64,000 bases of DNA from Ophelia neglecta (lineage: Eukaryota), in assembly GCA_965285935.1 (NCBI GenBank), contig OZ260663.1, positions 67,456,001 to 67,520,000 on the forward strand, written 5' to 3'. This document shows positions 11,301 through 64,000 of the stretch, piece after piece; the stretch's first letter is position 1; every line of letters begins with the position of its first letter. The translations under genes were made by a program, and so were the position numbers. Below the pieces are notes generated by a model. That model had not been told where the DNA came from. It did not search any database and was given only the letters and a program-made list of their open reading frames with translations.

Positions 11301-14300
11301 AGGGAGACTGACTTTCCCAATCATGGTGTTTACCAGACTGTTTATTCAAGAACATGCCATTCACAATGCAATCCTGTGAGCCTTGATATGTTTGTTTTGT
11401 TGACTAGGAGTCTGTTACCCAATCCATATAGAAGACTTCACAATTGCATTAATCAATGAGACCCCACTTCCACACCTTATGCCCCCCCCCCCCTTTTCCC
11501 CTGATTCGTAATGAAAGAATGTAATTATGATGAGGTTAAATGAAAAAGTCAAGAATGATGGGGATTTGAATGATGGTGATTAAAATCATGATTTAAATCA
11601 CTTGATTAAAATCATGCCAACCCTGAATTGTAAAACATTGATCAATTGATGTCAAATATATATATTCCATACTGGAATAATTTCTTCCAGTTTTGTCCGG
11701 AAAAAAACTGAAGAAACTGGAAGAAACTAGGTTTCTTCCAGTTTCTTCCATTGTCCCGGAAGAAACCTATTTCTTCCGGAAGAAACCCAACCCTGTATGA
11801 AAACTGGGCACATTTGCTACAACAGGACCAGGAATTTAAAAATATCAACATCAGCTTCCATAAAGTAAATGTGCATGTTCAAAAAACTTTCTGGTAATGG
11901 GAACCAAAACTGGCCAATGAATTAGAACTAGTATTTGACTAACCTCCATTTCAAAGTTCTTTTAATATTATTCTTTGTATGCAATATTTCTTATGGATTC
12001 AATAAATATAAAATGCATGTGTACTACACAGGACACAAATTTGTTTCTGTGTAAATGCCAGTGGTAGAATTGGTCACAAAATCAAGTTCAGTGATTTGTG
12101 GGAAACAACTGAATGATGTTAGACTACAATCATTTATAATCGGTTAAACCTATCAGTGAAGATCAACCTTCTCAGTAATTGTTGTGATTGTTGCTCAATT
12201 GTTTATCTGATATCTTCATCTCAGGCTGAAACAAATAATTTTCCTCAATATGCAATTTATAATATATTCACCATTTCACAAAATCGATCATTGTTTTTGT
12301 ATTACAAGCATTGATTGCTTGTTTTGGAGTACATTGCCGATCTTCAACAAGTGTCAAACATTTGTTAACTTCCAGTAAATGACCTCTGTTTTTGATGTAC
12401 GGTGCATTAACTTACTATTATATATCCACGTTTAAAAACTATACATGTGGGAAAGGCTTTGCTATACACTCTGTCCATTTATCTTTGGAATGAGACTAAA
12501 TGAAAATAATATAATTGAATAATAATGAATCTTATCACTATTAAATGGGTATCACCTGGCAAATGGCCAGAAACAATAATTAATATTTAACCAGGTAGGC
12601 TAACTTTCTATGGTCTCACTGGCACTGGCACTATTATGTCCTAGATAAAGGAGTAGAAGCTTTAAGACTTAATCCATTAAATATGGTGACCGGAGTCATT
12701 AAATATGGTGACCGGAGTCATTAAATATGGTGACCGGAGTCATTAAATGTGGGGACCTGAGTCACTGTCTTTTGGTTTGTATCTATATTTTACTGTGTTA
12801 GCTCTCTATTGTCCTCTTTAACAAGGTTTTGTCTTTCAAAGACACTAACTTTAAACTAAAGTATTTTTGTGGTTAGATTAATGTATTTTTTGTGTATTCA
12901 CTGGTAATATGTTTGGGTTACCGATTTCCTGTTGGTATAACATAATGTCATATGTTTTAATCTCTTATATTCAGAGTGTGGATAATAATTTCATCCTGAG
13001 CTTCACACACAGATTTGCTGAGAATAAAGGAGCAACTACTTACTTTGCATTCTGTTATCCCTGGTCATATGAAGAATCCCAACATCAAATGACAACACTG
13101 GATGACAAATTTCAGCATTGTAAAGATCTAACCTCAAAAAGGTAAGACTCAAGTTGCCAAGAAGAAATAATTTTGGTAGTAACATACTGATGCAAGCCTG
13201 AGACCAGTACCTGTCAAAACTGCCATTGTACATAAAAATATTCAAGGCCCATAACTTCATAAATGCACTGCTTATTGGGCTTCTTGTTGTAAATTATGGA
13301 ATAGTAAATGTCAGTGATATTTCATGGCTTATCATCCCCCAGGTAACAACCTTATGATGTCACTATATTGAATTCTATAGAGTACTGCAGAGTGGTTCAA
13401 TGTGAAAAAAAGAAATTGAGAAACATGTGTCACATGATTTGATTAATGCATGAATGTCTTTTAATAATGATTTCAGTGCCCCAGATCAGATTTATTACCA
13501 TAGAGAATTAATATGCCATTCACTGGACAAGCTGAGAATTGATCTGGTGACCATCAGTAGCTGCTCTGGGATGGTGGATGAAGAAGAACCAAGGTTTGAT
13601 GACAAGCTCTTCCCAGACCAAGAAACACCTAGGTGTAAAAAGTTTAAAAATAAAAAGGTAACTTCCAGAGATGAGCATAATGTATTGTCAACATAGATAC
13701 TTATCATACTAAAAAAAAACAGTTGCATTAAAAAGAATGAGTAAAAGTTCATATGTTACAGGTATTTAATTGTTTTGCATGTTGGTAAGTTATTTTACTA
13801 TCGATTTTATGAATACAAGTTGCTGAGAGGTGGATACCATCTAATTTATTGTTGCTTAGTTTCTGTGTACTTGTGACAGTGGGCTCAATGCCCTCTTTAG
13901 AGTGCTGCTTCACTGGAGCACCTGCCGTAGACACCAGACAGGGAGCCCGACCCAGTCACATTATACTGACACCGGGTTGACCAGTCCTGATACTACCCCA
14001 GAAATACTGGGCGCCTGGCAGGGAAGCTATCAGTACCTATGTTTACGTTTATTATGTTTTATTGTAGGTATATCTGGTGAGCAGCCGGGTTCACCCTGGA
14101 GAGACTCCAGCCAGCTTTGTCTACAATGGCTTCCTGGACTTTATTCTCAGGGAAGATGACCCCAGGGCCAGACAACTGAGAAGACAATACGTTTTCAAAT
14201 TGATTCCAATGTTAAATCCTGATGGAGTCAAGCGAGGACATTACCGAACAGACTCAAGAGGCGTGAACTTAAACAGAATGTACTTAGACCCTCGTTTTGA

Positions 14301-17300
14301 TATATATCCTTCTATTTATGCTTCAAAGGCATTACTTTCTTTTCACCATGTGAACAATAGAATTTGCTCCAAGACTGAAAGTGTATCTCATGGCTTAGGT
14401 GCTTCAAGTATGTCTGAGAAGACAGTGCTAGGTGAACGTGGAGATGGGTGCGAAACTAGCAAAATCATTGCAAAACCAATTAAAGACATAGCACCAAAGA
14501 CTTCTTCTTCTGACAGTAATACTCATGTGGTGCCAGCTAGGAGTAAAACTTATAATGTTGTATACAATAATGGATCAAGCAAAATCACTGTCGCAGAGTC
14601 CAACACAGTAAGCACAAAAAGTGATGGGGCTTTGCAAAAATCTGCCGAAGGCTGCAGTGAATTCTACTCAAGTGCCAAAAACCTGGATGCAGACATAGGC
14701 TTACAGCATGAAAGAGAGTCAGCAATACATAGCATGGACCAGTTATCATTACATAGTGAGCATTCACAGTTAGGTGCTATGGAGGTGAGTGACTGTGATG
14801 TGAAGTACGACAGCTTATCTGCTTCCAATGAATTAGCCTCAGGAGGGGAGTGTGAAGACATTGATGACGGCCCAGGGCCACACATTGGCAACGAAGGCTC
14901 TGATGATGAGGATGTCGCTTGTGCCCCAATCACCGACGGTGTTTACGCTCCCCATCTAAGTGATCCTCACTTGCTAGAAATTCCTCCACATGAGAGTGGA
15001 ATTGCTTTTTATGTTGACCTTCATGCCCATGCTTCTAAACGAGGATGTTTTATATATGGAAATTATTTTGAGAATGAAGATGCACATGTTGAGAACCTAT
15101 TGTTTCCTAAGCTTGTTGCTCTCAACACTGCCCACTTTGACTTTACTGGCTGTAATTTCACTGAAAGAAATATGTATCTGAAGGACAAGAGAGAAGGCCT
15201 TTCAAAGGAAGGAGCCGGGAGGGTGGCCATAATGAAAGCACTGGGAATAATACATAGGTAAGTCTAACAATGACCAGTCATCAGCCTTGAATTAGTTTTC
15301 ATCATAATACATAACATATCTCTGGAGAGTAGTTTTAAAACATTTTTATCATATCTTGGTGGTCTTCTGATATCAAGTGATGCTGAATGGAGTTACTGTT
15401 TTAAATGTGTGACTAATCATTTTCTTTTTAATAGCAATACTCTGGAGTGTAATAACTAATCATTGCCTATTCAATAGCTATACTCTGGAGTGTAACTACA
15501 ACACAGGAAGGATGGTGAATTCTGTGCCCCCAGCATACGGAGACAATGGAAGGGCTAGTCCTCCACCATTAGCAGGATTTCCTCCCAAATACACTGCTGC
15601 ACACTTTGAAGATGTAAATACAACATAAATCTTTAAAAGGCATTATTTATATTTATGTAAATAATATGCAATCTTCATATAGTTTACACAATTATGTCAC
15701 ATTTCAGTAAGCTATATTGCAAAGTCATGATGGTCATTATTGTGTGAAATTGGTCTAACATTGCCCTAACATTAACATACATGCTGTAACACACAGGTTG
15801 GCCGAGCTCTTGCTGTGGCAGCTCTAGATTACACAGAGACTAACCCCTGGTCCCGACTCACACTGTCAGAATACTGCAGTCTACCAGGAATAAAGGACTG
15901 GGTAAGACGGTATATCAAAGGACAGAGGGGGTTACCCCGGGGACCTCCAAATAGACCACAGAGAGCAGCTGGAATCAGAGGACAAGGGTATTACTTCTAA
16001 ACCTTGATCATTTCAGCATAAAAACTCCTCTATGTGAATGCTCTCCACTTTATGATTATTTACATTATTATATAATAGCAAAATACCAAAAAAGGGTGTT
16101 TTTACTTCAATTGTAGGGGTGCTGCCCAAAACCCCCTTATCCCACGTGTAGCACTGCTTGCCCAGCAGAGACAGAATGCTAATAACAGCAACCAAAGTGA
16201 GCAAAATCCACCTGCTCGGCCAGGTTACATGAGGAAACCACCCTTACAAAGTAGACAGCAACAAAGCGGTGGTGCTTCAAGGACTCCCGGAGGCAGCATG
16301 GGTGGTCCCCCCAGACGGGAGTATGGAGCAGGGTCTTCTCTCTTACGCAGGGATAGCGGGAACAATCTCAGCAATGGAGGCATGCAGAGAAGGGAGATGG
16401 GAGGACCCCCAGGCACCAAAAAGGAGCTCGGACCTATCAGAGATGGTCAGTATCCCATGTATGTGGCTTATGTGATGGGATTTATTTTAAATAATGACCT
16501 TATTTTAGAATGTGGTTACACCCATAGTAGATTTGCTAAGAGGCTAAAAAATTCAAGGCTGAAGCATCTTTGCCTTTGTATTAACTAATTACTTTTTGGT
16601 TGAGTTCAATAATATTTGGTTTCTATAGTAATTTTCTTTGTTTTAACAGATTAATATGTATTGGCTTAAATATGTATTGCCAACCTGTAATAAATCATGT
16701 TCTCTGTAACAGTCATATTGTCAAATTTGAACTTGACCTATGTTTTCAAGGTAAAATGAAAAATTATTGGCAAAGAAACGAACCTACATATTTTAGTTTA
16801 TTCACATTTGAAGTTATTTACAGTGTTTTAGAACACAAAAATGTACTGTATGTTCTGTCAACACTATAAAAACTTCAGTTTGTTCGTAACATCCTTTCAC
16901 TTCATTAAAAAATAGGCTTTCAAAATGTATAGGCAGTCTACAGGAAACCATGCACTGGCATTCCGAGGCTGTCATCTAATTTGTCCCTTTGTTGTTTCAG
17001 TGCCCAGGGCTACTGCTGACAGAAGCAGACGACGTTTGTCTAACTCATCCACTGCATCCAGTTCAACAAGTATTACTTTGTCTGCCAGTACATCTATGAT
17101 CCCTGTCCCTGCTACAGAACTGCACCACTCACAATCTGCTCCAGTCACACTTTGTATGACTACAGCTCAGTCCACTGACATCAAGGTTGGTGTGTGCATT
17201 CAACAAATAAACAGAATTTGGTGCTATTATTATGCATTTGGAGCAACATTTTGGCTGAATGAAGGGTTTAATTTAATAATGTAAATGTAAAATTTTATGA

Positions 17301-29794: not shown

Positions 29795-32700
29795 CTAGGC
29801 TAAGCGTATCTTCTTGGTCGCACTTTCCGTCTGATGGTTTATGGCACTGGTTCCATTCAACATGGTTTCAGGGCCTATGGCCTGAAGGAGAGAGGAGTTG
29901 GTTGATTCCCCAAATAGTGTAGCTAATAGGGCAACTCCATAACCTGTTGACCGTTCACCCTGAAAAACAATTACTTTAGGTCAAAATCCAAAATTAGAAC
30001 ACACTATTAATAAGGACAAAATCTTGGGAATAATGATTGATCAAAAACAAAATTGTTTTAGCAATTGGCAGGAGGTTGGTTACTTGTTAGTGTCGTACAA
30101 AAATAGTATACTGAAATGCAAAGAATTTATAGGCGGTAACATCCAGGGGTGGGGGGGGGGGGGGGTTGTCATTTTGAAATTTTGGAAAATAGATTGCTAC
30201 TCCAAGTGAACATTGGTTAAAATCTGTAAAGCTTACTGAATAAACTGGATAGGCCATATCTATGTGAATCCAAGTTCCTGGGTATTCAAATCCTATGTGA
30301 GCTCCTATGAATAATGCAGCACATGACACCTCTCCATTACTACGATCCTGATACAAGAAATACGATAAATTAATGAAACAAGTAACTGAGAAATGATTCT
30401 TGTCTGATTTCCCCCTATGCTCAGAGAAGCTTTTACCCTAATAACATTACCATACACCTGCAACACCCACCTTGAAATACCATTATTACAATAAAATAAC
30501 TTTTTTGGAAATAATAAACACTGACTGCACTGGAATTCTTCATATCAGCCATGGCGCTGGCAAACTCGCTGAAGTGTAGTTCAGGGCAGTAGAGCAGCGG
30601 ATGGATCAGGTCTCCTGATGTTCTGCCTGCAGCCACACAGGTGGGCTCCCACTCCTCTCGGTTGGTCACCATAGCACCATGATAACGTCCTGGTCAATGA
30701 ACATAGAACTTTAGAACATGAATTATTTATACAGGAAATTGAAAATTCCCTCCTCTCTCATCAAGTTGCAAATGTTCTACCACCAGTTACTTGACTTCTT
30801 AAAGAAATTCAAAGGGATATTACCAGGCTATAACAATACCAGACAGCATAAAGAGCAGAACAAAGAAATCATATGCAGTGAGCTTTCATCCTACAGCAGA
30901 ATAAGAATAGGACCTTGGATGTAGATTACACAATGAGAAAACAGTTAAAAGACCATGTACCTGTAGCCAATCCCTGAGCGCCAGTCAGAGTAGCCATGTC
31001 TACAATAACATCAGCTTTCAGATCTTTACTGGCATATGCTACCTGAAACATCATGAATAATTAGGCTTTCTATTCTTCAAAGCAAAAAAAAGCATCCAGA
31101 AATGCATGCTTTGGCCAGGGAAAATGGAAAGGTGATGTGTGCCTGAATGTTAATCAGGGGGTGGGGGAGGGGGGCAGGGATTATTAATTTTGTCCTCATT
31201 TTCAAATGACATTTAATTGTTTCCCATTCATCATAGATCAAAAGAAAAATCATTATGCCTCTTAAGAGCAACTATTACTGGTACTTTAAAATTGGCTTCT
31301 AAAAATGTCGTTTGTCAGTATGTAACTATTTGTTTACAGTCTCAAAGTTTGAGCAACTGAAGGTGAAGACTGAAGTTTTGGCAGAAGTGAAAGGAAGGGG
31401 GGGGGGCAGTAATTAGCAGAAGGGGGGGGGATTGGATTGATGGAGGGAGGAGTGGGAGTGAGGGATGCTTGAGTGAGATGATGGTGAGGAGGCACCCATG
31501 GGGGGGGGAGGTGGGGGGCAGAAGGGGAGGGAGGGGGTGAGAGGAAGGGAGATAGGCAGAAGTGTTTGGTTTTATATATAACCAATGTCACCACAGCTTT
31601 CCAGCTATTACAGTTATCAGTATTTGTAAAGGACAGTGCCCAATAGAAAGGGTCCCTCTTTGACTTTGATACAGATTGGGGAGGGTGGGGTTGGGGCAAT
31701 TTTACCCCAAGTAGTATAGACATATACATGTAACTGCAAAATATTGTCAATTACCACTCAAATAATCAAAGACTAAAATATCACAGATCTTACCCCATCT
31801 CCTAACACTAGTCTTCCTTCAGCATCAGTGTTATTAATTTCAACAGTTCTGAAATCAAATTTGGTATCAGAAACATGAACAAGTCAATCCTTTTAACTTA
31901 TCAATTGACTGATTGATAAGATTATGTCTTTTGGGTCTCCTATATATATATTAAAGGATAAATTGTTAATGCGAGTTTCAGTGCATAAAAAAACACTCAG
32001 GGATGGGGGGGCCTAAATACTACTGCTACTCAGGGGATTGTGTCAAAATTTCATACTAATTATTTTTGCCAATGGACTTAGAAATGTTGTTTGGACAGTT
32101 CAACTATTCAGGGCCCATCATTTAAATATCTTCTTTTTTATTGACTAGACACTACACATACAAAAACAGAGAGAAAATAAATTAAATTTGGTTACTCACC
32201 TTCCTGAATACAATGTTATTATGTCATCAGGTCTCAAGGAATTAGGACCAACAGCATTTTCAGCAAGACAAAATAAAGCATGAAGATTATCCCTAAAACC
32301 CTGAAAATGTGCAAATGAATGCCTATCTCTATAGAGTAATTTTAATGTGACATTAACACTTTTATTGAAAATCACATTGAACTCCATTTCATTAGTTTTA
32401 GGTGCATACGTTTTAATTGGGGCCAATTGCCTAGAATAATAGAATTCTTTACCTGTTTTACAGCAAGGTAAAAAGCTCCTAATACAGCCGCAGCCCCACC
32501 ACAATCTCGCTTCATTCCTGGCATGGTTGTCTGAAAAAATCATAGATCAGGATAGTACAGTGGTACATCTGCTTTACATAATTCATTTGTACCTTTGTTT
32601 TCCATGTTGCATTGCTTATAAACACAAATAAAACCTTTTCATTGTAACATGCACTTTTAGGCAACCAGTATGACGGGAATAATGGGGAATGGTATTATAA

Positions 32701-37927: not shown

Positions 37928-40900
37928 ATGGCTTCCACTAGTTGGGTCCAGAAAAACTTTACCGAGGAAAATCTAATGAAAATGTCACATCCTTTACATG
38001 CCAATAGCCTCCTTACTGCGCTGAATGAAACAAGAAAGAATCCTCGACTGTGTGACGGCACTCTTCTTATTGCGGATTCGGAGATTCCAGTGCAAAGAAA
38101 CGTTCTAGCTGCTGCCAGTCCTTACTTCAGGTATATCAGAACTGTCAAACAATGGCCATGAACAGACCTTGTTTTAAATTTATGGCTTACATCAAAATGT
38201 ATAATTCATGCTTTCAAGGAAATAGTTGTCTCAAATTTAAATAAGGCAAGAAATTGATAAAATCATAAATTGTTACTGTTGATGGTAACAAACTAAGAAC
38301 GTATTGTAAAATAAAAAATCGGCTAGATATAAATAGATTTAAAGGGGGAGGGGAAGGGGGGTGGGGGTGGGGGTTGGAAAAGGTAAGCTGTCGGGCACAT
38401 TTCCTGCATAATTCCCATCATCATATCCAAGCCTTCAAGGCAGCAGTAAATTTGCAGTATTTCCCTAGCTACTCAATTGGAAACAATTTACCTTAAATTA
38501 GAGCTAAATGTTCAGGAAAATCCTGGTATTTCACATATAGTACAGGGGTTGTGTTATTGGGGACAACAAATGACTAGTGCATAATCCTTTACTAGTCTGA
38601 CTGACTACAAGAACTCATGAATACACTGCCTTAGGGTTCATGCATCAAAGCCATGTTCTATCCCCTACCACATACCTCCCCCCTCCCCCCAACCCTCCCA
38701 GCATTGCAGGTTCTTGGCACTCACCAATTCTGCCTCCCCTAGCCTGCCCTGCACTAGATGATAAAAGTAGAGCTGCTGTATTGAGTTCAGGATTGTTGTA
38801 TTAATTTCAGGATGACTTACTACATCAACCCTCCTCCTCCTCCTCCCCCCCCCCCCCACCCCATGTCCACTTACCATACACCACTACTCCATGACACAGC
38901 TTAGCCTTAGTCTGCTCCTAATATTATTATTATCATTATTAGGTGTTTATTATCCCGAACTTAATCTGAGCGGCTTGAGAGCCAATACAAACATATATAC
39001 AGGGATTACAAAAGGATATAATCACATATAGGAATACATATACAATGACAACGTTTAAAAATGCATAGGTTTAAGTGAACATAACTTTTGCGAAAGGACC
39101 AAATGTTGTTACTATCAGTTTCAATATTGTTAGATGCTATCACACAGTTGCAAAGCTTGATTTTTCTATACAATAACAAAGAGAAGGCTTTGTTATTTTA
39201 ATTGTTGTAGATATCTAGGACTGAAAAATGACAATTTTTTTTGGTAGAAAGGTTCAGAAACAGTATTAAATCATTAGCTTAGAGAAGAAACAGGACATGC
39301 TGGGGCCACAGGAATAAAAAAGGGTCGCCAAGTTTCCTTGGGCAGGTAAAAATGACATAGGCCTATACAGCTTCCATCCCATTCAATGCACATATCAGGG
39401 TTGCTTAGATTTGTCCCTTACATTGCTCTTGGGCATCTGATGGTCAATATGAAAGGTTTGCATTGGGAGCATATGGATAAGAAGCTACAGCCCACTATAA
39501 TTCCATCAAATAGGGTAGAAAATGCCCCTGAAATGATGTATATATAATCAGTACTTGCTGAAAATGTGAGGGATTTTATCATGTTGCAGGAGAATGAGGG
39601 AAATAGGTAAATTGCAGGATTCCCAAGAAATATATCTATGTTTTATATCTATAAATACTTTGCTTAACTCATTTGATCACAATTGGTGTTTTGATTTATA
39701 TTGTTAATGTTGAGATGAACTTTACTGTTACTATATGTGTGCACACTAATCCTGTGACTGTTTTACTTTATTCCAGGGCTCTATACAGCTATGAATTGCC
39801 AGCAAATATGTCAGATTCCAGGAGAACACCCCTCAATATTGATAATTTGACCAGTGCAATATTTGAACAAATACTGGATTACATTTACACATCTGTGATA
39901 GTTCTAAGTGAAGAAAACATACAAGATATTCTTCAGGCAGCAGACATATTGCTCATGACAGATTTGAAGGAGCTGTGTTGTGAATACTTAGAGCAATGCA
40001 TTACTGTATCTAATTGCTTAGGAATCAAGGAATTCACTGAGAGATTTTCCTGTCCAAGAGTGTGTCACAAGGCCACAAACTTCATGGATGAAAACTTCCT
40101 GTATGTTGTATTCCATCTATTCTTGATTTTAAGTGCATGTCCCTGTAATTATGTCCCTGGTGGGTTCTATATACTTAGGGATATCATTTTTTGTGCTGCA
40201 ACTCTGGGATAGTTGATGGTGTTGGTTGTAATGCCTTAGGTTATTTTAAACATCACAAAAGCCAAACATCTTTACTTTGGTGTATAACATCTTGGGTGTA
40301 GATGAACATGGTAACATCCATATTTGGCACATTTATAAATGTTATCCAACAGAACAAAATGGGCACCAAACTTATGGCAAAAACATATGGCACCTAATTA
40401 GATCCTGAGACATCGGGGGTGGTATTGTGGGTATTTATATCCTGCTGAATATTAAAATATTCAAAGTATACTCTCTTGAAACTATGGACAAATATATATT
40501 TCAAAGTGTCAGCCTATTCAGCCATATTATGCTAAAGATACTAAGGTAATATGCATGAAGTGTGACAAGTTTCCTTACATTTCAGTGAAATTAGCTACAC
40601 GGAAGAATTTTTATCAATGCCAGCAGACAAGGTTAAGGATATCTTAAAAAGAAGTAGCCTTCTCATTCAGACTGAAGATGCAGTTTTTGACTGCATCATG
40701 CGATGGATCCATCATGATAGCAACACTAGGAGAGATCAACTACAGGTAAGTACAAACAGGATGTTCTTTTTATTTCTATGGTGGTATCTCCTGTAATGCA
40801 CAAAAAGTAATGACCTGTGAACTCTTGAGCTACTCATTAACCATGCTTCACAAGTCCCCTGCATTCACTGGGGACCCCACATGCCACAGCCATTTTTATT

Positions 40901-43261
40901 TTAAATAGTCTTGTTGTGCAGGCAAAACAAATAAAGACAATAAGCTCATGAAAAAAAAAATTTCCTAAATGGAAATCAAGTAAAATGACCCGAATATATT
41001 GTATTGTAAGACAGACAAACATATTTTGATGGTAGTTTTACCAGTTCAAATGTTCATGGTTTTATTCTGTTTTTTTTAAGGACATTCTTACCACTTGTGT
41101 CCACATGGGTTTGCTTGATGAGAGATATGTCCAAGAACATGTAATTGCAGATGAGCTTATAAGAAGTCTCCATCTGGAGAATTTTGTTCTGCGTATGAGA
41201 CAAGAAGATAGTATGAAAAAACAAAGAGGATATACAAACATGATTGTAGTAACAGGAGGAGAGGGGAGCTCTAAACGGTAATAACATTCTGTTCAACATG
41301 CATGTAATGTCTCCTAAATGCATTCTTCCCCAGCATGGTAGGCACTAGCTGCTTTGAACTAATGTAATATCTCTCTCTCTACTCATTTGTTTGACTGAAG
41401 ATCAATTTTGCACAAGTGCCTTGTAACTGATTTTAATTATTTTCCTGGGTGCTCTGGCTGCAGTGTATATCAATGTGTACACTACATGCTAGGGTATGAT
41501 GGTGTCACAGCTAGGGCTCAGTTTACAGAGTCCTTGAAAAAAAGCCTGAGGAAGTAATTAAAACCATATTTATGTCTGCATTTATTGTTATAGAATTCAC
41601 TAAATTGATAATAATGATGTTCTAATCTTGCAAATATCTTAATCTTTCAGTGACCCAGAGATTGTGGAGATCAAGAATTATGTCCGTTGCACTGCATATC
41701 ACGGCTATGAGGAAGGTAGAACGTGTGCCTGGATCAACCTTGCTCCAATGCTTTCTCCCAGAATAGGACATGGCATGGTAGAAGCTGGTATGCATTTTTA
41801 AGTTTTCTGACAATGGATTTTAAAGTTTAAAGGATTTGTTTTATTGTTCAAGGCTCCTACTTTTAATAATGCGAGACTCGTGGCATAACATGCCGAATCA
41901 CAGTACACTTTTTTCCAAGCATGCACTCTCAAAAATGGCAATTATGCACATATGTTATCAATGCCCCAGTCTTAAAGGATGTTTATATAGCTTTATCTAG
42001 GCTAAATCTTTGGCCCTGCACTAAATGCTGACTTGGTACATGACAATATGTGGCATGGATTGGATGAAGTTGACATTGGCTCTATGGCTGACAATATTTA
42101 CAAACAATTTTCAGAGAAGGAATTATCATAAGTGCTATACAGCAAATTTAAATTAGCTAGTCTATATATGTGTAGCATTTTTGGTTGGACTTTCCAAAGT
42201 ATTGTGGTGTTGGAAAAAATACCCCATGGAGGAGATGGGATCACCTCAATTTTCTTTAATGCAGTATTACAGTATTATAGTTTCTTATAGTATAACTTAT
42301 ATGACACCTTTTTATAAATCTAAAAGATGTGTATGTTTTTTTTTAATCTTTTATTATATTATGTTTTTCAGGTGGATATCTCTATGTAATTGGTGGCCGT
42401 GATGACAGTGGGCGCATTTTAAATACTGGAGAGCGATATGATCCTTGCAACAATGTATGGGCTGCTACTCCTCCTATGAACCATGCACGGGTAGGCTTTG
42501 GACTTGTGGCTGTCGATGACAAGATATACGCCCTGGGAGGCAGTAATGACATGTCTGACCCACTAACTAGTGTGGAGGAGTTCAATATTTATACAAACAA
42601 ATGGAGGCGTTTACCGGATATGAATCTGAAAAGGGCTTGGTCAGCCCATGCTGTGTGTAATAAAAAGATATATGTTATCGCTGGAGGCATCATGGGAAAG
42701 CTTTATGAAGCTGTCGAGTGCTTTGACCCTAAATCAGAAGCTTGGGTTTCTGTGGCACCAATGAAAGAAAGAAGATTTGATGCAAGGGCCATAGGAATGG
42801 GGGAAGATATATTTGTGTTTGGTGGCTTCAGGAGGTTTGAATGCCCTAGTGCTATGCAAAGTGGATCTGGAATGAAATTCTGTGGCACAGAAGTATATTC
42901 AACTGAGCAGAAACATTGGATGATGATGAATAGAGACATGGCCATGTGCACTATGACAGACAGTAGCCATATAGACGCAGTCACTAAATGTAAAGATGAA
43001 ATAATCTTAATTGGTGATTTGGATGTTGGAGGTATGAGGCACTGTGTGCGTGCATATCGACCTAGTACCAACAATTGGAGAGGAGTGGTCCAGAATCACC
43101 CCACCGAACAGCGAGCAATGCAGTCGTGTATTCTTAAGATTCCTAGTTCTCTGGTGTATGATCTCACTTGGCAACAAGACAAGCTAACATGGAGTAGTGT
43201 AAGGCAAACTTACGGTCCCCAGCATATGTGCAATGCAGGCCAACATAGTCAGTTTATGTAG
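37928..43261 (+). CDS. GAN: Gigaxonin (BTB-BACK-Kelch Cul3 adaptor), 636 aa
   Basis: Exons 37928-38130, 39777-40100, 40586-40745, 41081-41277, 41651-41787, 42372-43261 (1911 nt). Gigaxonin-like segments EIPVQRNVLAAASPY, IQDILQAADILLMTDLKELCCEYLE, RGYTNMIVVTGGE, WINLAPMLSPRIGHG, GERYDP; Kelch GG repeats. AATAAA at ~43508. Confidence 0.88.
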
Positions 43262-52813: not shown

Positions 52814-55800
52814 TTAAGGCAATAAAACATCTTTGGTATTCTTTTTTACAATCAAATATGCATGTTTTAATACTGGACGATGGTGGGGAAAGTTCTGGCA
52901 GTGAACACGATTTTCTTTCAGCAAATCGGCTTCTTTCTGTAGAAGTTCCTGTAAACACAAAAAAAAGCTCTCAAAATTTTATTGACAATGAGTATAACTG
53001 TAAATATTTTATTCTCTAGCCACATTTGTTCTATATAGCAATTTGGATACTGTCTCAGCTCAATCCTTGTGACATCTGGATTTGATATGGATTTGGAGCT
53101 GTAACTGATAATACTACATCTTAAGAGGTGACATTGGAACTAGGGATATGACTTCTATTAGCTCTCTGCTACTCTTCGTGGGAGAGAAATGCCATCCAGA
53201 TTACTGCTGCAAAAAGGCATTTCTTACTGTAGATCTATACACATTCCATTCTTTCTTTGTTTGAAAGGATAAATGATTGAGCTAATGTTAGTAAAAATCG
53301 GTTAATTTTGGCTGTCCATTAATTCAATATGACCCATATAGAGGTTCATTGAACAAATCTGAAAATGGCACTACTAAACTTGGCATGTTTAAGTTATGTG
53401 TTCCCGTTACCATGGCAACACTGACCAAATCCAATCAAGTAATATTAAGCGCCTATTTAAGGTTCAGCCTATGGCATTTTAAATTGTGTTCATTTCTAAA
53501 TGCTGTAGTGCAGGGGGGGACTCAACGGTTTTCTGGAAATGGAAAATATTGTTTGTGTGTTTAACATGTTAATGGACACCTGGGAACGTTGGTAACAAGT
53601 GAGTTCAAGAAGTTCAGGTCAATAGCTGTTGAACACTTATCCAATAACCTTTGTCCCCATTTCCCCAACCTTTGTTGACATTTTCAACACAATAAAATGA
53701 CTGCCCTTGGCTGCCATTTTGTTTTCCGATCAGGCTCAAAACCTTTTCAGCTCCTTGCAAGTGTCATTTGAAGTCTCACATGAAGTTATGAATTTATTCC
53801 CACAACAGTTTAAAACACTGAAGTTAAATAATCAATTTTCCCCCTCAGTGCTAAAACATAATTAATTCTTTGTTAATAAGACAAATATGCCCTACTGTAA
53901 CATGCACAAACAAGGCATTTAGAAAGCAAGCCCCCCACCAATTAAAAGGGATAGTAGATCTCCTAGTCACAAAATCACTCCTGGCAAAGTCCAAGTATGA
54001 GTGGGACTCAAACCAACCCCCCACCACCCCCCCTCACAATATATTATTTGATCAAAACACTGGGTTCGAATGAAATAATGATAAAAGCAAAAAAAAAAAA
54101 ATGACATAATTTTGCCAATTGCATTTCTTATTGCTATGGGAACTTATTATATTAAGGTTTCCGCTAAAAATTAATTAGTTCATGTTAAGCTCATAATGCT
54201 TCCTCAATTTCAGCCATGTACATGTACCTCTAAAAATTTGCGCAATCTTGTAAACAAGCTTTGGTCACAATAGTGTTTCGGAGAAAGTAGTACAGGCACT
54301 AAGGAACATGTGGAATACAGTAACTGTGTGCCTAACAGTTGCGGAGTTATAACCAAAACAAATGGTGGCATTGCAAAACATATCCCCCTACTTTTTTTTT
54401 CAAAAAACGGTTTTAAGGAAAGTTTTTAAATACCTCTATCCTCAGTAAATAGTCACAAATAAGAGATGAATATGAATCCTGAGAAGAGGCACACTGGGCT
54501 GCTGGTTGTTGTGGCTGATGAGATAGTAAAGAGTTCTTTGGCGTGGGCAATGACAGTTTGTCTCCACTTGACCGAGGGGAAGTGGATTCATGCCCTGATT
54601 GCCTTTCCTTCGTATGATGCTCATTTGAAGATTCGTTTGTGCTTTTTTCTCCTGTGGCACAACTACTTGTTGTTAAAGAGTCTTTACAAATGAAATTGCC
54701 TTTACCTACGGTTCCTCTCATCATTCGCAAAGGAGGTTTTTTCACAAAAAACCTGTGAGGTTTCAGAGTGTGTTTCTTTGCAACACAGTGAGTCTCATTG
54801 TTCAAGTCCATCATTTCTCCCATTTGATCACAACCATATTCTTTTGCTGAATGTTCATTTTGATCATGAAGAGTATTTTGATCAGTAACGCGTGGATTGT
54901 TTGTCATTATATCCCCATTTTTACTATTGTCTGTTCCCTTTCCCTTGTTCCCAGTTAGAGATTCAGTAGAAGGAACAGGAACATCTATACTGGTAAGTTC
55001 AATCACATCTTGATCAACTTCTTGTACAGCTGGTGCTGCACCTGCTAAACTTTTTTGACTTTTGTCACAAACATGCACTGAGCCTGCTGTAGAGCTCCCA
55101 ATTTTATGACTTGATTCCAAAACGTTGGCAGAATCTGCTGGCGATACAATTTCCTCAATATGTTCACCTTCTTCAACACAAGACACTAAAGCAGATGTTT
55201 CCAGAGCAGTATCTGTATATAGTTTATGTTTCCCTTTCCTCGTAGGTTTGTTTATTGCTGGCTTCTTGTACATTACTTTAGGGTCATATCTGGTTTTCTT
55301 TTTTGGACCTGTACTTTCATTCAAAGAAGTCCTTTTACTAGCCCTTACAGCTTGTTTAGTTGGTGATACTGGGCACTGTAAAGTTTTTCTTGTTCTTAAA
55401 CACATTCTTGTTTTTTCCTCATTAGCCTCAGTATCCACAGTTTCTTCTTTGCCCTTCCTAGACTTTCTTCTTTTGACCGGTGTACTTTCAATATCTGACA
55501 CTGGAAGAATAAGGCCATCTTCTTGTATAATATTCTGTGTGGTCACTGCATCTGCTGATGTTTTAGACACATTATGACTTTTCTCGGAACATTGTTTGCT
55601 TCCTGCTTCTAACAGATCAACACCAGTCCGGGTCAAACTGATTTCTTTTCTAGCAACACTTTTTTTCATTTCAGGAACAGTATTGCAGGCAGGGGGGCAC
55701 ATGGGCTGTGTGGTGGCCTGTTTTCCTGTAACACAGTTCCAGTTATCCATTAGTGAGAAGCTAACATCTTTAGCCATGTTGTCTGTAGTGTTAGTAGATG

Positions 55801-58800
55801 GTTTAAGTGTACACTTTTCACCAGTATCTCCATCATAAGCCACACTTACAGAGGAGGGCAGTACATTGCCACTGTCCATTGTAGATATGTGACTTAGTCT
55901 TCTCAGTCTTTCAGTCTCATTTCTTTCTGATACATTAATTGCATCAGATAAATCATGTGATAATGACACTCTCAGTTCCTCTAGCCTCTGCTTCTCTTTT
56001 GCCTCTTGGACAGCAATATTAGACGCCTTCAGCAAGGGTCTTGCGATACATTCTGCTGTGGTATTTTGTTTTTGCTTAATCTGAGATTCATGCTCATCAG
56101 CAACCACAGATTTGTTGTGGCTATCAAATTGTATGTTACCTCCCTTCTCCAACATTTCTGATACAGTTTTATCTTCATTAGGAGACTCTGTTTCCAGTAT
56201 GGGTTTCAGTGGAGACATTGGAAAGTCGGGTACAGAGATTTGGGAGTTGGTGATATGATCTAGCTGTGTGGACTGTCTATGCTCGCATGAGCTGTCAACT
56301 GGTGTGTCTGTTTCACTGCATCTTGGCTGCTGGAAGATAGGATTACTGATTACTAACTCCGACTGAATGCCTGCACTCGTCACCCCAAGCTGAAAAAGAC
56401 AAGAAAAAATTCACTTTTAACTAACATTTACATATTTATTGGAAGGTTCTTCAGGAGAATAAAAAACAAGGTTTAAGAGTCATTTCCTTCAATGAATTAT
56501 GGAAGTGCACGGACACACTTTTTCATAAAAATGCAAGCCTAATTTTAATATACTGGTAAATCAACTTGATTAAATAAATCTACCTTTTAATGTAATGAAA
56601 AAATGAATATTGAGTAAATTTATTTGTAACACAACTTATTTTCCTTGTCTTTACCTCTTGGTCATTGGAGTCAGAGGAGTCAATTCTCTGGCCATCTTCA
56701 TCATCAGCATTCTCTCTAGGAGCCATTCTAGGAACCCTGATCAGTTTATCAGTATTTTGTAGACAAGGTGAATGTACATGAGGTGTTTCCAACTGATGCT
56801 GGGTGCTTTCCCTCTCTGTGTCATTCACAGCATCAGGCTGTGTTTCAGAGCCCATAGCCAGCGAATCACCAACCTGGCAGGAGACACTGAGACATTGGCG
56901 CTTGCCAGCCTGGACTTGGCTCTCCAAACATAGCATGTCTAAAGAATCCCCAACTTGGACATCTACATTGTGTGTTTTCACATTTTCATCATCAGAATTT
57001 TTTGGTAATTCAATGGGTGACTGCTCTGATTGTGGAACCGTCTTAGATGATTTACTTCCATAATTTAAAGAAGACTTTCCTTTGTTACTCTCAGTGGCAC
57101 AATCTTCCTCCTGAGTAATTATGTTTTGATATACATCTGCCACATTTGCATTTGGTGGTTTTTGTCTTTTCTCTTGATGATTTGTTGTATTCCATTCTGC
57201 AATTAATATATTGAATGTAACTTTATTCTTATGAAAATAATAAACTATTCATTTATAAATCAGAGAAAGCCTACATTTGCCATGGAATCTGGGAGGAGCA
57301 CAGCAGTTCAGCAAAGAGGAAATGCTTAAAGGTCAATATTTTCAGCAATGATCGCATGATGCATATGCAAAGCCCATCATTGAAACTGGTGTGAAGCAGC
57401 TTTACTATTAAACGATATTCAATAAAAGCCTTAACATTTGCGAGTCCATTATTTTGCGAATTTCGCAAGCATGGTGAAAACCGCAAAATTAAAAGGCTCA
57501 TGAAAATTTAAGGGCCTGCAAAAAAACTCTTGTTTGAAACTTTAAAATGGAGAATTAAAGGCCGGCAAAATAAGTTGTGTATTACAACTGCAAACATTAA
57601 GAGCCAATATAAGAGTTTGACTTTAAGAGTGGCAGCATCCTTGGATTAACAAAGTAAGACTGAAAAAGATCTCTTTGTGTCTGCCTATAGAGAAAAACAT
57701 ATGTCCAAATGACTATTCACAGACCTGGTATTGCATTAGTAAGTTCTTTTTCAAGGGTCGATGTAATGAAACTTGACAGGATCAGTTTTGTAGAGGGAAT
57801 GTGCGTGCCTGCTTCCCATGAGAGTGTTCTTATGCCATCTTCTGTATGAACATTGGATCTGTCTGTAAATACATAAAGCACACACTATTTTAATTTGTGA
57901 GCCAGTTGTTAGTAATACTGGAATGCTGGTAATGTTTGCACATTATTCATCGTGCAGTTTCTTTGGGTTTCTTCAGTTCCCTTGGGTGCTGTTTTGTGTT
58001 GAACAAGTGTATATCTAATGGTACATCATAACATGCGGGCAAACCTCTAAGGGATAGTCTATATTTCTGCCCATTGGGTAGAAAGAATTAATTAACTTAT
58101 ATTATATATGATATTGAAAATGGCGCTAAATTAGCAGACAATGCCACTGATAAAGCTACAAAAATTTGTTCTAAATGGCGGGGATGAGTGTTACTGGCGA
58201 GAGCCCCCCTCCCCCCATATTCCATTACTTGTTAACAAGTGTAATTTTAAAATGAATGGACAGAAATTCCAACACCAAATTCCATGAAATGTCCAAACAT
58301 TTTTGTCTGAACCCACCACCCCACTTACTACTTACACCCTGAAATACAATTCACTTTTTTAAATTTTTTCTTCAGAACTGCCCTTGATTAATATGATAAA
58401 GTTCAAATTTGACAAACACCATTAGAACCACATTGCATAACTTGGTTAGCAGAAAATCTTAGTTTTTTATTGCATTGCTAGAATAACCAAAAAGATGCAT
58501 AATGATTACCGCATTATAGCTAATTCACGTTTAAGGCAGCCATGCTTCAGCCTTGACATATGCAGCCTTCAAGCTATAATGCTTTAGGCAGAAACTTGTA
58601 ACACCAAGGGCTCTAGGATACTGATTTGGCCCTGGCTGGTGTGCCAACACAACTTCCCGGGTTTCAACTGTTAAACTTTTTTTAGTGTTTTGCAGAATAC
58701 CTCAGAAATGGGGAAATGGAACAGGGGCCACTCCATTTCACCAAATGTGTTTCTTCAAAAAAAAAAGGGGGGGGGGTGCAAAAATCTATTCCACAAACCT

Positions 58801-61800
58801 TGTATTGAATCCTGATGCTCATTTTCAAGTTCTGGGGTAATAAAATTGGAAAGGGCCAATCTAGTGGAAGGAATAGAAAGGATGGGCTTCCAGCCACATG
58901 TCCTTAAGCCTTCATCAACTTCGGATTCTGCAGGAGAACTCGGTCTTCCTGCAAGTACATCTGCAAATGTCAATAGTAAAATAACTATAAATATTCTTTT
59001 AATTAAAAAAAAAAACTTGAGTGTGAAAATTTCATACTTAGGATTTGTATTCTCATCAACAAACCTTTTTGAAGATTGCTAGTACTAGCTCTCTTATCAT
59101 AGTTGTTTTTGTCCTTTTTTTGAGACATTTTGCGGCCTTGAAATGTCTGACTTTCTTTTAGCTGTAAATCCTCTGGTGTATTGGGATGATCTGATGTCAG
59201 CTCAATGGATTGCTCTAAATCCTTTAGCTGGGACAAATTGTAGCTTTGTGATGACTGATCCCCTGAAAGTGCTAACTTCTCTAATATTGATAAATTGTGG
59301 CTTTCAGATGTCTGTTCAATTGTATTGTGGCTTTCTCCTGTTTCAAGGTGATCAGAATCTACAGCGTCATAGGTGTCCTGATTCTGAATAGATGCAATCT
59401 CACCGATTCTGTCTCTGAAAGCAGAAGCAATGCGAACCTTAAATGATGGCTATCAGATTCAGATTCAGATTCAGATGTATTTATTGGACCATAGCAAAAT
59501 GAAAATGTCAAATGATTAATGGTAAGTTGAAATTATAATTATGGTCATGGAGACCCTCACTAAGATGAATATGAATCAATTTTGAGGTAATCACTAGCAT
59601 GGGAGCCACCTTAATATAACACTGAATGTATATATGGGTACTGGAAATAACAAAATACATACAAAATATTTGTTTAATAATGAGTTGTGGATAATAATTT
59701 AAATAAATTCGCATGCACACATCACACCAACCTATTAAATCAAAATTTATAATAATATACCACACAAGTAGACATAAGATTATCTGTGTTACAAGTCATC
59801 CTCCCCTTCGCCGGAGGAAGGATAAGCCGGAGACACAAGGCAAAAGAAACAAAATATATATATATAAAACACATCAAACAAGAAATGCAAATAATTGCTA
59901 GATGCATGGTTGCAGAAGTGATTAATGTACCACAGTAACATTAGCAATCCACATCAGAAGTGATAAATACAGTACAATACAATATAGTAACATTGGTAAT
60001 CCGTAGCCCATATCTCTCCGATCACCCTCAGCCTAAGGTTTAGAATGACCGGAGAAACACAAACCACAGCCCACTTTGCCAGATTTCTGACAAAGAATAC
60101 ACCAGAGGAAGGACAAGCCAGAGATACAAGGCAATAGGAAAAAAAATATACATATAACACATCAAACAAGAAATGCAAATAATTGCTAGACGCACGGATG
60201 CAGAAGTGATTAATGTACCACAATAACATTAGCAATCCACATCAGAAGTTATAAATACAATGTAATATAATATAGTAACATTGGTAATCCGTAGCCCATA
60301 TCACTCTGATCACCCCCAGCCTAAGGTTGAGAATGACTGGAGAAACACAAACCACAGACCACTTCGCACATTTTTGCACAAATTTTTATGAAAGATAATA
60401 ATTTTGCAGCAAGATTTAAAATTATTTGATCTCCGCTGTAAATAATGTTTTACAATCATAATGAAATTCAGGGAAAGTAATCCTTTTTATAAAACATTTC
60501 TAACTAAACTGCAAGCAATTCGTGAACCAGTATAAAAGATAGTTACGGTTTTATCAGTTTCAAATTAGCAGCAGATAATTCTTGTACCTTGGGATGGTCC
60601 ATTCTGTAAAATAAAACAATTGAAGCCATTACCAGTATAAACATACATTATTTGAATATTCATGGCTTAAGCTGAAAAGGTTTGAAACAATCACTACCTC
60701 TACTAAATAAGAGGACATAATGTCCAAGGGAATATGAAATTATTATTGATAAAATATAAACTGTATAAATATGTGCCTTCTAACAAAATGTTCACATGTC
60801 ATTTGTGTAAATGTTGGCCATGAATCCTAAATAAGTCTATCAATCCACACAGCATTGAAACTTACAGGCCTAAACAATATATGTTATGCATGCTAAACAG
60901 CTTCTGTGGGTCAAGGGTTTTCAAAATTATAGTCATTTAAAAGGAGCTAGCATACATGTAGATGCAGGCCCAAGCCCAAATATATATCTCTCCCCATGAT
61001 TTATTTTCTTCCAATACTGTGGGGGCAAACAATATCACTTGCTAAGTATAGAGAATTATTTTTGCATGCAATTTGACTTTTATGTAAGGTGGAACAGGAG
61101 CTTCTGGCCTATCATTTATGAAATAATCTAAACTACATGTATACTCACATAAATTCAATATCATTTTTGTGGTGAAATCCATGCTCAAGAAAAACAAGTT
61201 CAAATTCCTCAATGATTAGTTGAAACTCACACCAATGCTGCATTGAAAAAACATTTAGTAATTTTATTGGACTGAACATTAGATATTGCATAAACTTATA
61301 TAACTGGTAATACTACATCAATGCAAACCCCAAATTTTTGTCTAAAAAAGTGATCAATTATACCAAACATTCTTGATAATATAATGAAACAAAGTCTTAC
61401 AATCAGTTCAATGTTTATAGCATGGAATGAAGGATACTACCATATCATTACACCAGTATATATATTATTGTAATCTTACCAAATCTGGAAAATGCACAAA
61501 GTGTGAAAAGTATTTGTTTAAAAGCAATCTGGAACGGTTCCAATCAGGAAGACTGCACTCTGCAAACCTATAAAAATGATCAATTTGGATTTGAATGAAA
61601 ACACAAAATAGAAGTTCAATATACTGTAATTCCTCTTATATTTAACAACTAATATAATTATAATTCCAGCACTATGAATAATTAGAGACAAACCAAAATT
61701 ATTACTACTTGGATTGGTACTATTTTTTCAAAGTCTCCATGAGAGGTTACCATGTTGAAGTACTTGTAATGGGAGGATTTAATTTTTTTTAAATTATGAG

Positions 61801-62953
61801 AAACTGGAGTGTATCAATTACTTAAGTGTGTATGTATAAGTAGAGGAATTATGATATACATGTTTTGGGATATGTGCCTTATGTGGCTGTTTCTGTTCAT
61901 GGGAAGGAGTATCCCCTGGTCAGATAAGCAGGTGAATTGACTGAGCAGAAGGGTGGATCCTCTGGTCAAATAAACAGGTTCATTGGATTGGTAGAAGGGT
62001 GGATCCTCAGATAAACAAATTTTGATGAATGTAAGGATATTAACAAATCTGGATGAATGCGACATCAGATTTTTTTATTGGTATCTATTAGACTAGTACA
62101 GTGAAACCTGTCTAATCAAAAAAACGGACCATATTATGGTTAATATGCAGGTCATTTAAAAGACGTAAAGAGGATTTGGCTCTCATTTAGTGGCCTTAGT
62201 GGGCAAGTGACCTTATTACACAGGTGACCACAAGAATAGATGTCACTGTGGTACTTTTATCACTGCTCTGGTGAAGGCTGACCAGACTGACTTAAAAATA
62301 GGTGTTGGGGTACTATCTTTTGCATTCTCCCTTTAATTGGAACTACTTTCATTAGTGTGCATGATTCCTGAGGTTATCATATTTTAGTTTAAAATATGTA
62401 TGATGGTATGTGTTTGCACCGATCAACCTTATTAACTTTCTGTATCTATAATTACATATTTGTGAATTTTAGCAGAGCATTTGGAGTGAACACCCCTCGA
62501 ATCCATGTCTTTCCATCTGTCACTTGCTTTATAACATTCCCATCCTTGACATCCATATGCTGCAATGAAATTAAAATTGTTGAAATGTTGATTTTTCATT
62601 TCATCTATGAGTTGGACTATATTTAGACACGGAATCTAAACTTATTTATAGCTAGTATTCACAGGAAAAAAAACTAACATCTTGGGCACTTGGGGACAAA
62701 AAATATTGTAGGGTAGAGTTCAAAAGAGCAGGCCTATAAAAATTAAAGCATAAACATAAATTATCCCACTAACCTTTAGCACATTAACAGCTCGGGGCAG
62801 ACTCTTCAAACTTTGGGGATTCTCCTGACAATGTTGCTGTTTTCCTTTCTCTTTTCCACCATCACTTTTATCATTACTGATATGTTGAAAAGTGACAAGG
62901 TAGTCAACCAACCAATGTTTTGGGCCAAAAACATTACATGTCTTCTTTGACAT
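52814..62953 (-). CDS. ACD: Putative TPP1/ACD-like shelterin protein: N-terminal OB fold plus very long low-complexity region, ~1266 aa
   Basis: Exons 62953-62774, 62559-62456, 61567-61480, 61237-61149, 60603-60547, 59414-59065, 58960-58799, 57862-57725, 57196-56655, 56389-54434, 52948-52814 join in frame (3801 nt). The N-terminal series KHWLVDYL / VTDGKTWIRGVFTPNAL / RLLLNKY / EFQLIIEEFEL / DHPKVQEL follows the order of TPP1 OB motifs (RPWIRELIL / VSDGTHSVRCLVTREAL / RLLLLQD / EFYLQVDRFSL / DVQKKL, recalled). The gene structure is more certain than the symbol. Confidence 0.7.
59455..60380 (-). repeat. Retroelement 3' remnant with (TCTGAA)n tail and a ~290-bp internal tandem duplication
   Basis: Reverse complement aataaatacatctgaatctgaatctgaatctga at 59455-59486; 59811-60100 is repeated at 60101-60380. 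Confidence 0.75.
62099..62248. mobile_element. Tc1/mariner(pogo)-type MITE
   Basis: TA|cagtgaaacctg ... atgtcactg; same terminal type as 4069-4225. Confidence 0.6.
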
Positions 62954-63825
62954 GGTCACTTGAACTGTTTTGAAGTAGTATGTTAACCTGAAAAAAGCAA
63001 TAATGTTCTGGTCATTACACAAGCCATTGAATCTAGAACATAGTATATAAGAGTTCATACTGGCAAATTGTTAGTAAACACAGAATTTTCTAGTGCACCT
63101 ATGCTAAGCATTTGGAGACCAACCAGGTGTTGTTGCACACAAATTGCAGAATTTTAAACTAAACGAAGTTTTAAATGCAACGATAAATTACTGACAAGGC
63201 CTCGCTTCCTCATGCAGAAACTTATTGCGATGTTTTTTTTCCGTAGTTTTGTTCATACAGTGAAGGCCCGAATCCATAATAATGCACTTTACCAGTCACT
63301 AACATTTTCTCATTACAGTATATAAATTATGTAAGTACTAACACTACCAGAACCTATTTTTTTATCCTCTCCTCTTATATCCACCTTCCAATGGTCACCA
63401 TCTGCATATCGTGACCCCCCCCCCCCCTCCCCCCTTCCCCCAATCTACCCTATCTCATTTCCTCACCAACCGCCAGCCCTCATTATCCAATGTATCTATC
63501 ATTACAGGTCTATCTAATAAAATACTATATCCTCAATGTAATTGAAGGTTAGAAGAAGGGTACTGTGAAACCCTTTAGCGTTCATTGTTTTGGCATTAAT
63601 TGCCTGCCCTTAACTTTTGCATTCTACAGGCCTTTAGTTGGCCTTAATTCTTGCGAGCACTTTGATTTCATGGGTCTTGACCCTACTCGGTCACACAAGT
63701 TTTACAGTAGATTTCTATCAAGAACAAAATACTAATTGGCCATTGTGCATAGAAAAGCAATGTTTAAAATGCTCTCTTTCAAACTATGGAGGAGTGCTCT
63801 CTGTTGTAAACTGGAAATGTTTGTG

Positions 63826-64000
63826 TTTTAACGTCCCTTTCAACACTTGAGAGGTCATATCGGGACAGGGAGTCTCTTGGAAAGATGAGGCGAAGGTCTG
63901 ATGAATCACTCCCCCGACACAAGGTTAGGTTGAAAACAGCCCTCTCAAGCTGGGTTCGAACTCAGACCTTGGAGGTCGGAGGTCCAGCACGCTACCACTG
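63826..64000 (-). mobile_element. tRNA-derived SINE, running off the window end
   Basis: Minus strand: cagtggta (A-box), gagttcgaaccc (B-box), then body and tail gatatgacc..tgttgaaagggacgttaaaac. Confidence 0.8.

What the first reader, a model, noticed from the sequence alone, without database searches (positions are those of the whole stretch)
60547..62953. Candidate invertebrate TPP1/ACD telomere OB-fold gene hidden across small exons
Seen: five short exons, four of them absent from the ORF track, splice into MSKK..KHWLVDYL..PRAVNVLKH..VTDGKTWIRGVFTPNALLKF..RLLLNKY..CEFQLIIEEFEL..MDHPKVQELSAANL. Known: TPP1/Est3 OB folds begin with a PW(I/L) helix and carry S/T-D-G-x3-(I/V)R and EFxL(x)VxxF; they recruit telomerase via the TEL patch, which includes the Glu of EFYL. 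Inference: this is a fast-evolving shelterin TPP1 orthologue likely to be labelled 'uncharacterised'. At ~1266 aa it is more than twice the length of human TPP1. The EFxL Glu is kept, but the acidic TEL-patch loop looks altered. Human ACD and GAN are both on 16q, and GAN lies ~10 kb away here, which is weak support.
Basis: partly seen in the sequence, partly recalled or inferred. Interest (0 to 1): 0.82.

Follow-up and report, generated by a model that had tools for sequence, protein, structure and literature searches.

The report
Likely TPP1/ACD telomere gene, small exons
The five small exons are real-looking and most likely form the front end of this animal's copy of the telomere protein TPP1 (ACD), a family already described across invertebrates, so it is a routine gene-annotation result and not a discovery.

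Summary
On the minus strand, five short exons (62953-60547) have canonical GT-AG sites, matching phases and an ACCATG start, and they give the quoted peptides. They continue in frame through three more exons to a stop at 54413, giving an eight-exon model of 1128 aa, not ~1266.

Exon 2 alone (34 aa) hits one Pfam family out of 24,736: PF10341, TPP1/ACD (E 0.015-0.02, 15 bits, profile positions 53-82 of 158). That is below the 26.5-bit cut-off. The rest of the profile fits the sizes of exons 1 and 3-5.

No other exon matches anything in Pfam or the PDB. The 656-aa ORF inside exon 8 has no relative among 1.84 billion representative proteins.

Myler et al. 2021 already report TPP1 OB folds throughout metazoans, variable linkers and non-conserved TEL patches. 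Verdict: probably a TPP1 orthologue (about 0.78), a new member of a known kind, modest interest.

The parts
62774..62953 (-). Exon 1 (180 nt, 60 aa). Start codon in an ACCATG context.
   Evidence: no Pfam, PDB or word-search match on its own
62456..62559 (-). Exon 2 (104 nt). Carries the TDG...IR motif. This is the only piece with a family match.
   Evidence: PF10341 TPP1, E 0.02 / 15.1 bits and E 0.015 / 15.5 bits, profile positions 53-82 of 158; translation
61480..61567 (-). Exon 3 (88 nt), contains PDWN...RLLLNKY. Together with exon 2 it completes an ATG codon at the junction.
   Evidence: no match of its own
61149..61237 (-). Exon 4 (89 nt), contains CEFQLIIEEFEL.
   Evidence: no match of its own
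60547..60603 (-). Exon 5 (57 nt). By the profile arithmetic this is the end of the presumed OB domain.
59065..59414 (-). Exon 6 (350 nt, 116 full codons). Acidic and hydrophilic. It sits where TPP1 carries its POT1-binding region.
   Evidence: its phase fits exon 5; single-sequence AlphaFold gives pLDDT 54 with helices at 36-49, 60-69 and 80-83; no Pfam, PDB or word-search match
56655..57196 (-). Exon 7 (542 nt). Hydrophilic linker.
   Evidence: acceptor ttgcag|AA accepts the 1 nt left over from exon 6; no Pfam match
54413..56389 (-). Exon 8 (1977 nt including the stop; 658 aa). Long hydrophilic linker and C-terminus.
   Evidence: acceptor tctttttcag|; no Pfam domain for the 656-aa ORF inside it, only a chance-level E 0.37 match to DUF3482; that ORF has 0 relatives among 1.84 billion representatives; composition

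Best explanation
This is the 5' part of a protein-coding gene on the minus strand. My model has eight exons and 1128 aa. It most likely encodes this animal's orthologue of the shelterin subunit TPP1 (ACD). Exons 1-5 (about 173 residues) would form the N-terminal TPP1-type OB fold. Exon 6 would hold the helical POT1-binding region. Exons 7-8 (about 840 residues) would be the fast-evolving, probably disordered linker and tail. By analogy with mammalian TPP1, the protein would bind POT1, tether it to the rest of shelterin, and use the OB surface to engage telomerase. What is shown: the exon structure and the exon 2 match to the family profile. What is inferred: the fold, the partners and the telomere function.
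For: (1) The exon chain has canonical GT-AG sites, consistent phases, a Kozak-like start and one open frame of 3387 nt. (2) Exon 2 alone hits PF10341 TPP1/ACD as the only one of 24,736 Pfam families, at E 0.02 and 0.015. The per-family probability is about 6-8e-7. That gives roughly 0.003 such hits expected by chance in the six-frame translation of the whole 64-kb window (my arithmetic). (3) Ten non-exon ORF peptides from the same 2.4 kb give no hit below E 0.15 and none to TPP1. (4) Colinearity: the hit covers profile positions 53-82. The 52 positions before it face 65 model residues (exon 1 plus 5). The 76 positions after it face 78 residues (the codon spanning the exon 2/3 junction plus exons 3-5). 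So the domain would end at the end of exon 5. (5) The architecture matches published TPP1 (PMC8653790): an N-terminal domain, then about 950 hydrophilic residues. Disorder-promoting residues make up 67-72% of this part and GRAVY is -0.8 to -1.2. It has no Pfam domain, and its largest ORF has no relatives. (6) Exon 6 is predicted to hold two or three helices, at low confidence.
Against: The Pfam score (15 bits) is below the 26.5-bit gathering cut-off and rests on 30 residues. Exons 1, 3, 4 and 6 match nothing on their own in Pfam or the PDB. No orthologue could be fetched. Related contigs show no TPP1-like exons within 19 kb of their gigaxonin-like gene. The OB fold was not modelled. There is no transcript evidence for any junction.
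Confidence: 0.78

Rival explanations
1. The gene is real, but its N-terminal domain is not TPP1. The exon 2 match would be a chance or motif-level resemblance in a lineage-specific, largely disordered nuclear protein of unknown family.
For: Only one 30-residue stretch matches, at E 0.015-0.02 and below the cut-off. About 19 peptides were scanned in all, so one hit to some family at this level is not rare. Nothing else in the 1128 aa matches anything.
Against: The single hit is to exactly the family that was proposed beforehand. It lies at the right place in a domain of the right size. The architecture also fits TPP1. Controls give nothing comparable.
Confidence: 0.15
2. Some or all of exons 1-5 are not used. 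The transcript that holds the large exons 7-8 would start elsewhere, and the small exons would be chance open segments or remnants of a decayed gene.
For: Codon-usage scores of the short exons are not individually significant. There is no transcript or orthologue support. My crude chain-finder preferred some other small segments.
Against: Seven consecutive canonical GT-AG introns keep one frame open for 3387 nt. The ATG is in an ACCATG context. Exon GC is above intron GC. The Pfam hit lies inside one of these exons.
Confidence: 0.07

Closest known systems
Metazoan TPP1/ACD (shelterin subunit; Pfam PF10341), as surveyed by Myler et al. 2021 (PMC8653790)
   Same: An N-terminal domain of about 160-170 residues whose central part matches the TPP1 profile. 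It is followed by a short helical region and then a long, non-conserved hydrophilic linker. The published survey also reports that invertebrate linkers are unalignable and that the residues known to contact telomerase are not conserved outside mammals.
   Different: The part after exon 6 is about 840 residues, longer than the 50-700 aa linker range reported. No C-terminal TIN2-binding motif could be recognised; the survey found none in most invertebrates either. Family membership at Pfam's own threshold was not shown, because only single exons were scanned.
Budding-yeast Est3, fission-yeast Tpz1 and ciliate TEBP-beta/p50 (the wider TPP1-like OB group)
   Same: A telomerase-facing OB fold of the same structural class. 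This rests on established knowledge and was not tested here.
   Different: Est3 is a small protein made of the OB fold alone, whereas this model has 1128 aa. No sequence match to any solved member was found with single exons.
Gigaxonin (GAN), the neighbouring gene
   Same: BTB, BACK and kelch exons on the + strand at 39.7-43.3 kb. The best solved-structure match is human gigaxonin at 9.5e-24, against 4e-17 for KLHL3.
   Different: It is not part of the finding.

Membership tests
TPP1/ACD (PF10341) | Sequence match to the TPP1 OB-fold profile at Pfam's gathering score (26.5 bits) | tested here: inconclusive
   Scanned exon by exon only. Exon 2 scores 15.1-15.5 bits (E 0.02 / 0.015) and TPP1 is the only family hit. 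Exons 1, 3 and 4 give nothing. The joined domain was not scanned.
TPP1/ACD (PF10341) | Domain of the right size and order at the N-terminus | tested here: met
   The hit covers profile positions 53-82 of 158. There are 65 residues before it and 78 after it within exons 1-5, facing 52 and 76 profile positions.
TPP1/ACD (PF10341) | Three-dimensional OB fold resembling the human TPP1 OB domain | not tested
No natural orthologue could be fetched to stand in for it.
TPP1/ACD (PF10341) | Helical POT1-binding region directly after the OB fold | tested here: inconclusive
   Exon 6 gives a single-sequence AlphaFold model with pLDDT 54 and helices at 36-49, 60-69 and 80-83. It has no PDB or Pfam match.
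TPP1/ACD (PF10341) | Long, poorly conserved, disordered linker | tested here: met
   In exons 6-8, disorder-promoting residues are 67-72% and GRAVY is -0.8 to -1.2. There is no Pfam domain. The 656-aa ORF inside exon 8 has 0 relatives among 1.84 billion representatives.
TPP1/ACD (PF10341) | C-terminal TIN2-binding helix | not testable with these tools
   No profile or orthologue is available. It is reported absent from most invertebrate TPP1s (PMC8653790). The 3' end of the model is itself uncertain: either the stop at 54413 or a donor at 54434.
TPP1/ACD (PF10341) | TEL-patch residues on the OB surface (human E169, E215 and others) | not tested
   This needs a residue-level alignment to human TPP1, which I did not make. 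The literature says these residues are not conserved outside mammals. E169 and E215 are documented in PMC4359370.
TPP1/ACD (PF10341) | Binds POT1 and telomerase, and localises to telomeres | not testable with these tools
   Needs experiments.
Est3 (yeast) | Small protein consisting of the OB fold alone | tested here: not met
   The model has 1128 aa, of which about 950 follow the presumed OB domain.

The most novel reading that the evidence does not exclude
This would be a TPP1 whose tail of about 840 residues is longer than any linker in the published survey and has no detectable relative anywhere. Its telomerase-facing loop would lack the mammalian acidic residues. In that case this lineage would tether TPP1 and recruit telomerase through surfaces unlike the mammalian TIN2-binding motif and TEL patch.
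Probability: 0.12. Interest if true: 0.5.

Novelty: new member of a known kind. Interest (0 to 1): 0.27.

Why it matters
If confirmed, this adds one more invertebrate TPP1 with an unusually long tail. It also shows that a gene split into 57-180-nt exons can be recognised from a single 34-residue exon. How TPP1 recruits telomerase outside mammals is still an open question (PMC8653790). One more sequence does not by itself make that question testable. For annotation, the practical value is a corrected gene model for a locus that ORF-based callers would miss.

Tried and rejected
**Searches that found nothing**
- Exhaustive profile search with the 656-aa ORF: 0 hits.
- Word searches with exon 1 and exon 6: nothing.
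- Exon 2 was too short for the word search and for the search for related loci.
- An alignment of two overlapping references to exon 2 was accepted, but found no relative in the metagenome contigs.
- A degenerate DNA pattern for TDGKTWIRGVF found 0 matches in the metagenome contigs.
- phmmer of exons 1, 2, 3, 4 and 6 against the PDB found no TPP1, Est3 or Tpz1. The exon 2 hits to fucose-binding lectins at E about 0.1 are repeat-motif noise.

**Synteny walk from the gigaxonin-like exon into related contigs**
- The two closest relatives (73-74% identity) had no DNA on hand.
- L001 and L007 end about 5 kb downstream.
- L002 and L006 (64% identity) show no TPP1-like exon within 19 kb by tblastn, tblastx or motif scan.

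**Other attempts**
- The codon-usage test is too weak for exons this short.
- My ab initio chain-finder inserted doubtful small exons. I set it aside in favour of the hand-checked E6-E7-E8 chain.
- The organism could not be named. Accession look-ups in the paper library found nothing.

**Rejected readings**
- Est3-type small protein: the model is far too long.
- The large ORFs belonging to a separate gene: the phases join cleanly to exons 1-6.

Full report
**What is there**

The window has 36.6% GC and no N. The finding lies on the minus strand.

| Exon | Coordinates | Length | Notes |
|---|---|---|---|
| E1 | 62953-62774 | 180 nt | ATG in an ACCATG context |
| E2 | 62559-62456 | 104 nt | |
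| E3 | 61567-61480 | 88 nt | |
| E4 | 61237-61149 | 89 nt | |
| E5 | 60603-60547 | 57 nt | |

- Every intron is GT-AG. Acceptors are preceded by pyrimidine-rich tracts and donors resemble GTRAGT.
- The phases fit. Split codons read ATG at E2/E3 and ATA at E4/E5.
- Only the E1 ORF exceeds 60 aa; the ORFs around the other four exons are 20-48 aa.

**The rest of the gene**

- E5 leaves two bases over. An acceptor at 59414 (gctttcag|) takes them into a 350-nt exon, E6 (59414-59065).
- E6 leaves one base over. An acceptor at 57196 (ttgcag|AA) takes it into E7 (57196-56655).
- E7 ends in phase 0. E8 starts at 56389 (tctttttcag|) and runs to a stop at 54413.
- The eight exons add up to 3387 nt, or 1128 aa.
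- A weaker donor at 54434 leaves room for further 3' exons.
- My crude dynamic-programming chain-finder proposed some extra small exons inside intronic repeats. I do not trust them.
- A codon-usage score trained on the neighbouring genes is positive for E1, E2, E5 and E6 and strongly positive for E7 and E8. It is not significant for any single short exon.

**What it is**

I never joined the exons for any search, fold or script. The joined steps (Pfam or HHpred on the whole domain, AlphaFold plus Foldseek on residues 1-175) are therefore left out.

- Exon 2 alone (34 aa) hits one Pfam family out of 24,736: PF10341, 'Shelterin complex subunit, TPP1/ACD'. The hit is E 0.02 and 15.1 bits, at profile positions 54-82 of 158.
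- The 37-aa ORF around exon 2 gives E 0.015 and 15.5 bits, at positions 53-82.
- This is below the 26.5-bit cut-off, but that cut-off is meant for the whole 158-position domain.
- Dividing by the number of families gives a per-family probability of about 6-8e-7. Over the whole six-frame translation of the window, that is about 0.003 such hits expected by chance (my arithmetic).
- Ten non-exon ORF peptides from the same 2.4 kb give nothing below E 0.15 and nothing to TPP1.
- The geometry fits. The 52 profile positions before the hit face 65 residues (exon 1 plus 5). The 76 positions after it face 78 residues (the codon spanning the exon 2/3 junction plus exons 3-5). The domain would end where exon 5 ends.
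- Exons 1, 3, 4 and 6 have no Pfam match on their own. Exons 1-4 and 6 have no TPP1-type match among solved structures. Pieces of 29-60 residues from a fast-evolving fold are not expected to match on their own.

**The tail**

- Exons 6-8 are hydrophilic. Disorder-promoting residues make up 67-72% and GRAVY is -0.8 to -1.2.
- They carry no Pfam domain.
- The 656-aa ORF inside exon 8 has no relative at E <= 0.001 among 1.84 billion representative proteins. So the species' own proteome is not in that library either.
- A single-sequence AlphaFold model of exon 6 has low confidence (pLDDT 54). It shows helices at 36-49, 60-69 and 80-83. This is compatible with a helical POT1-binding region but does not prove one.

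**Attempts to bring in relatives**

- The kelch exon of the neighbouring gene finds ORF-type relatives at up to 74% identity.
- The two closest relatives had no DNA on hand.
- Two related contigs end about 5 kb beyond the kelch exon.
- One 981-kb contig, walked to +19 kb, shows no TPP1-like exon by tblastn, tblastx or motif scan.
- Word searches with exons 1 and 6 found nothing.
- Two scans of the metagenome contigs found nothing.
- No contig was taken for human, and no human sequence was used.
- The organism could not be named. Its only support is that no public ORF comes closer than 74% identity to the conserved kelch exon.

**Neighbours**

The BTB-BACK exon at 39673-40209 (+) matches human gigaxonin best among solved structures: 9.5e-24, against 4e-17 for KLHL3. 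It carries BTB and BACK domains, and a kelch exon ends at 43261. So a gigaxonin-like gene does lie about 11 kb from the 3' end of the candidate, tail to tail. That ACD and GAN share 16q in human comes from my own knowledge. It is only loose same-arm linkage, so I give it little weight.

**What is already known**

Myler et al. 2021 (PMC8653790) surveyed shelterin across metazoans, including molluscs, echinoderms, cnidarians and cephalochordates. They report the following:
- The TPP1 OB fold (pfam10341) is conserved in all metazoans.
- The TIN2-binding helix is absent from most invertebrates.
- The residues known to contact telomerase are not conserved outside mammals.
- How non-mammalian TPP1 recruits telomerase is an open question.

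The human TEL-patch residues E169 and E215 are documented in PMC4359370. I did not test the loop or the EFxL Glu, because that needs an alignment to human TPP1.

**Verdict**

This is probably the TPP1/ACD orthologue (about 0.78). It is shown only through one exon's sub-threshold but specific profile match, plus colinearity and architecture. The OB fold, the partners and the function are inferred.
- It is a new member of a known kind.
- The only mildly unusual features are the tail of about 840 residues, longer than the published linker range, and its complete lack of detectable relatives.
- Interest is modest.

Noticed in passing
window 59851-60382 (intron 5): A 244-nt direct repeat in two copies 288 nt apart, 89% identical. 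Similar ORF-like translations recur a third time just downstream (59789-59947).
   Followed up: partly
window 61911-62008 (intron 2): A 46-bp tandem repeat, 2.1 copies, 83% matches.
   Followed up: no
window 57725-57862 and 58799-58927 (minus strand, intron 6): Two open segments with similar translations and flanking AG/GT. My exon enumerator picked them up as false exons. They are probably copies of a dispersed repeat.
   Followed up: no
window 39673-43261 (+): A gigaxonin-like gene with BTB, BACK and kelch exons. Its best solved-structure match is human gigaxonin. The closest public ORF-type relatives of the kelch exon reach only 74% identity.
   Followed up: yes
window 14077-15258 (+), 747-1172 (-), 32199-32543 (-): Exons of other genes: an M14 zinc carboxypeptidase (cytosolic carboxypeptidase-like, with a long insert), an ankyrin-repeat protein, and a piece matching the M17 aminopeptidase catalytic domain.
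   Followed up: partly
window 63417-63440 and 63925-64000: A C-rich tract about 470 bp upstream of the start codon. A stretch that looked tRNA-like by eye (a possible SINE) lies at the window's end, but ARAGORN calls no tRNA there.
   Followed up: partly
L007 3037-7190 (related contig, inside its gigaxonin-like gene): An LTR-type retroelement. Its called ORFs hit reverse transcriptase, RNase H, integrase and, at one end, the SCAN domain.
   Followed up: no
loci of P0008 (no DNA held): In the closest relatives, short minus-strand ORFs follow the gigaxonin-like exon. Three of them (106/107, 41 and 56 aa) keep nearly the same spacing on two contigs of one sample. They might be that species' compact TPP1 gene, but the sequences could not be read.
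   Followed up: no
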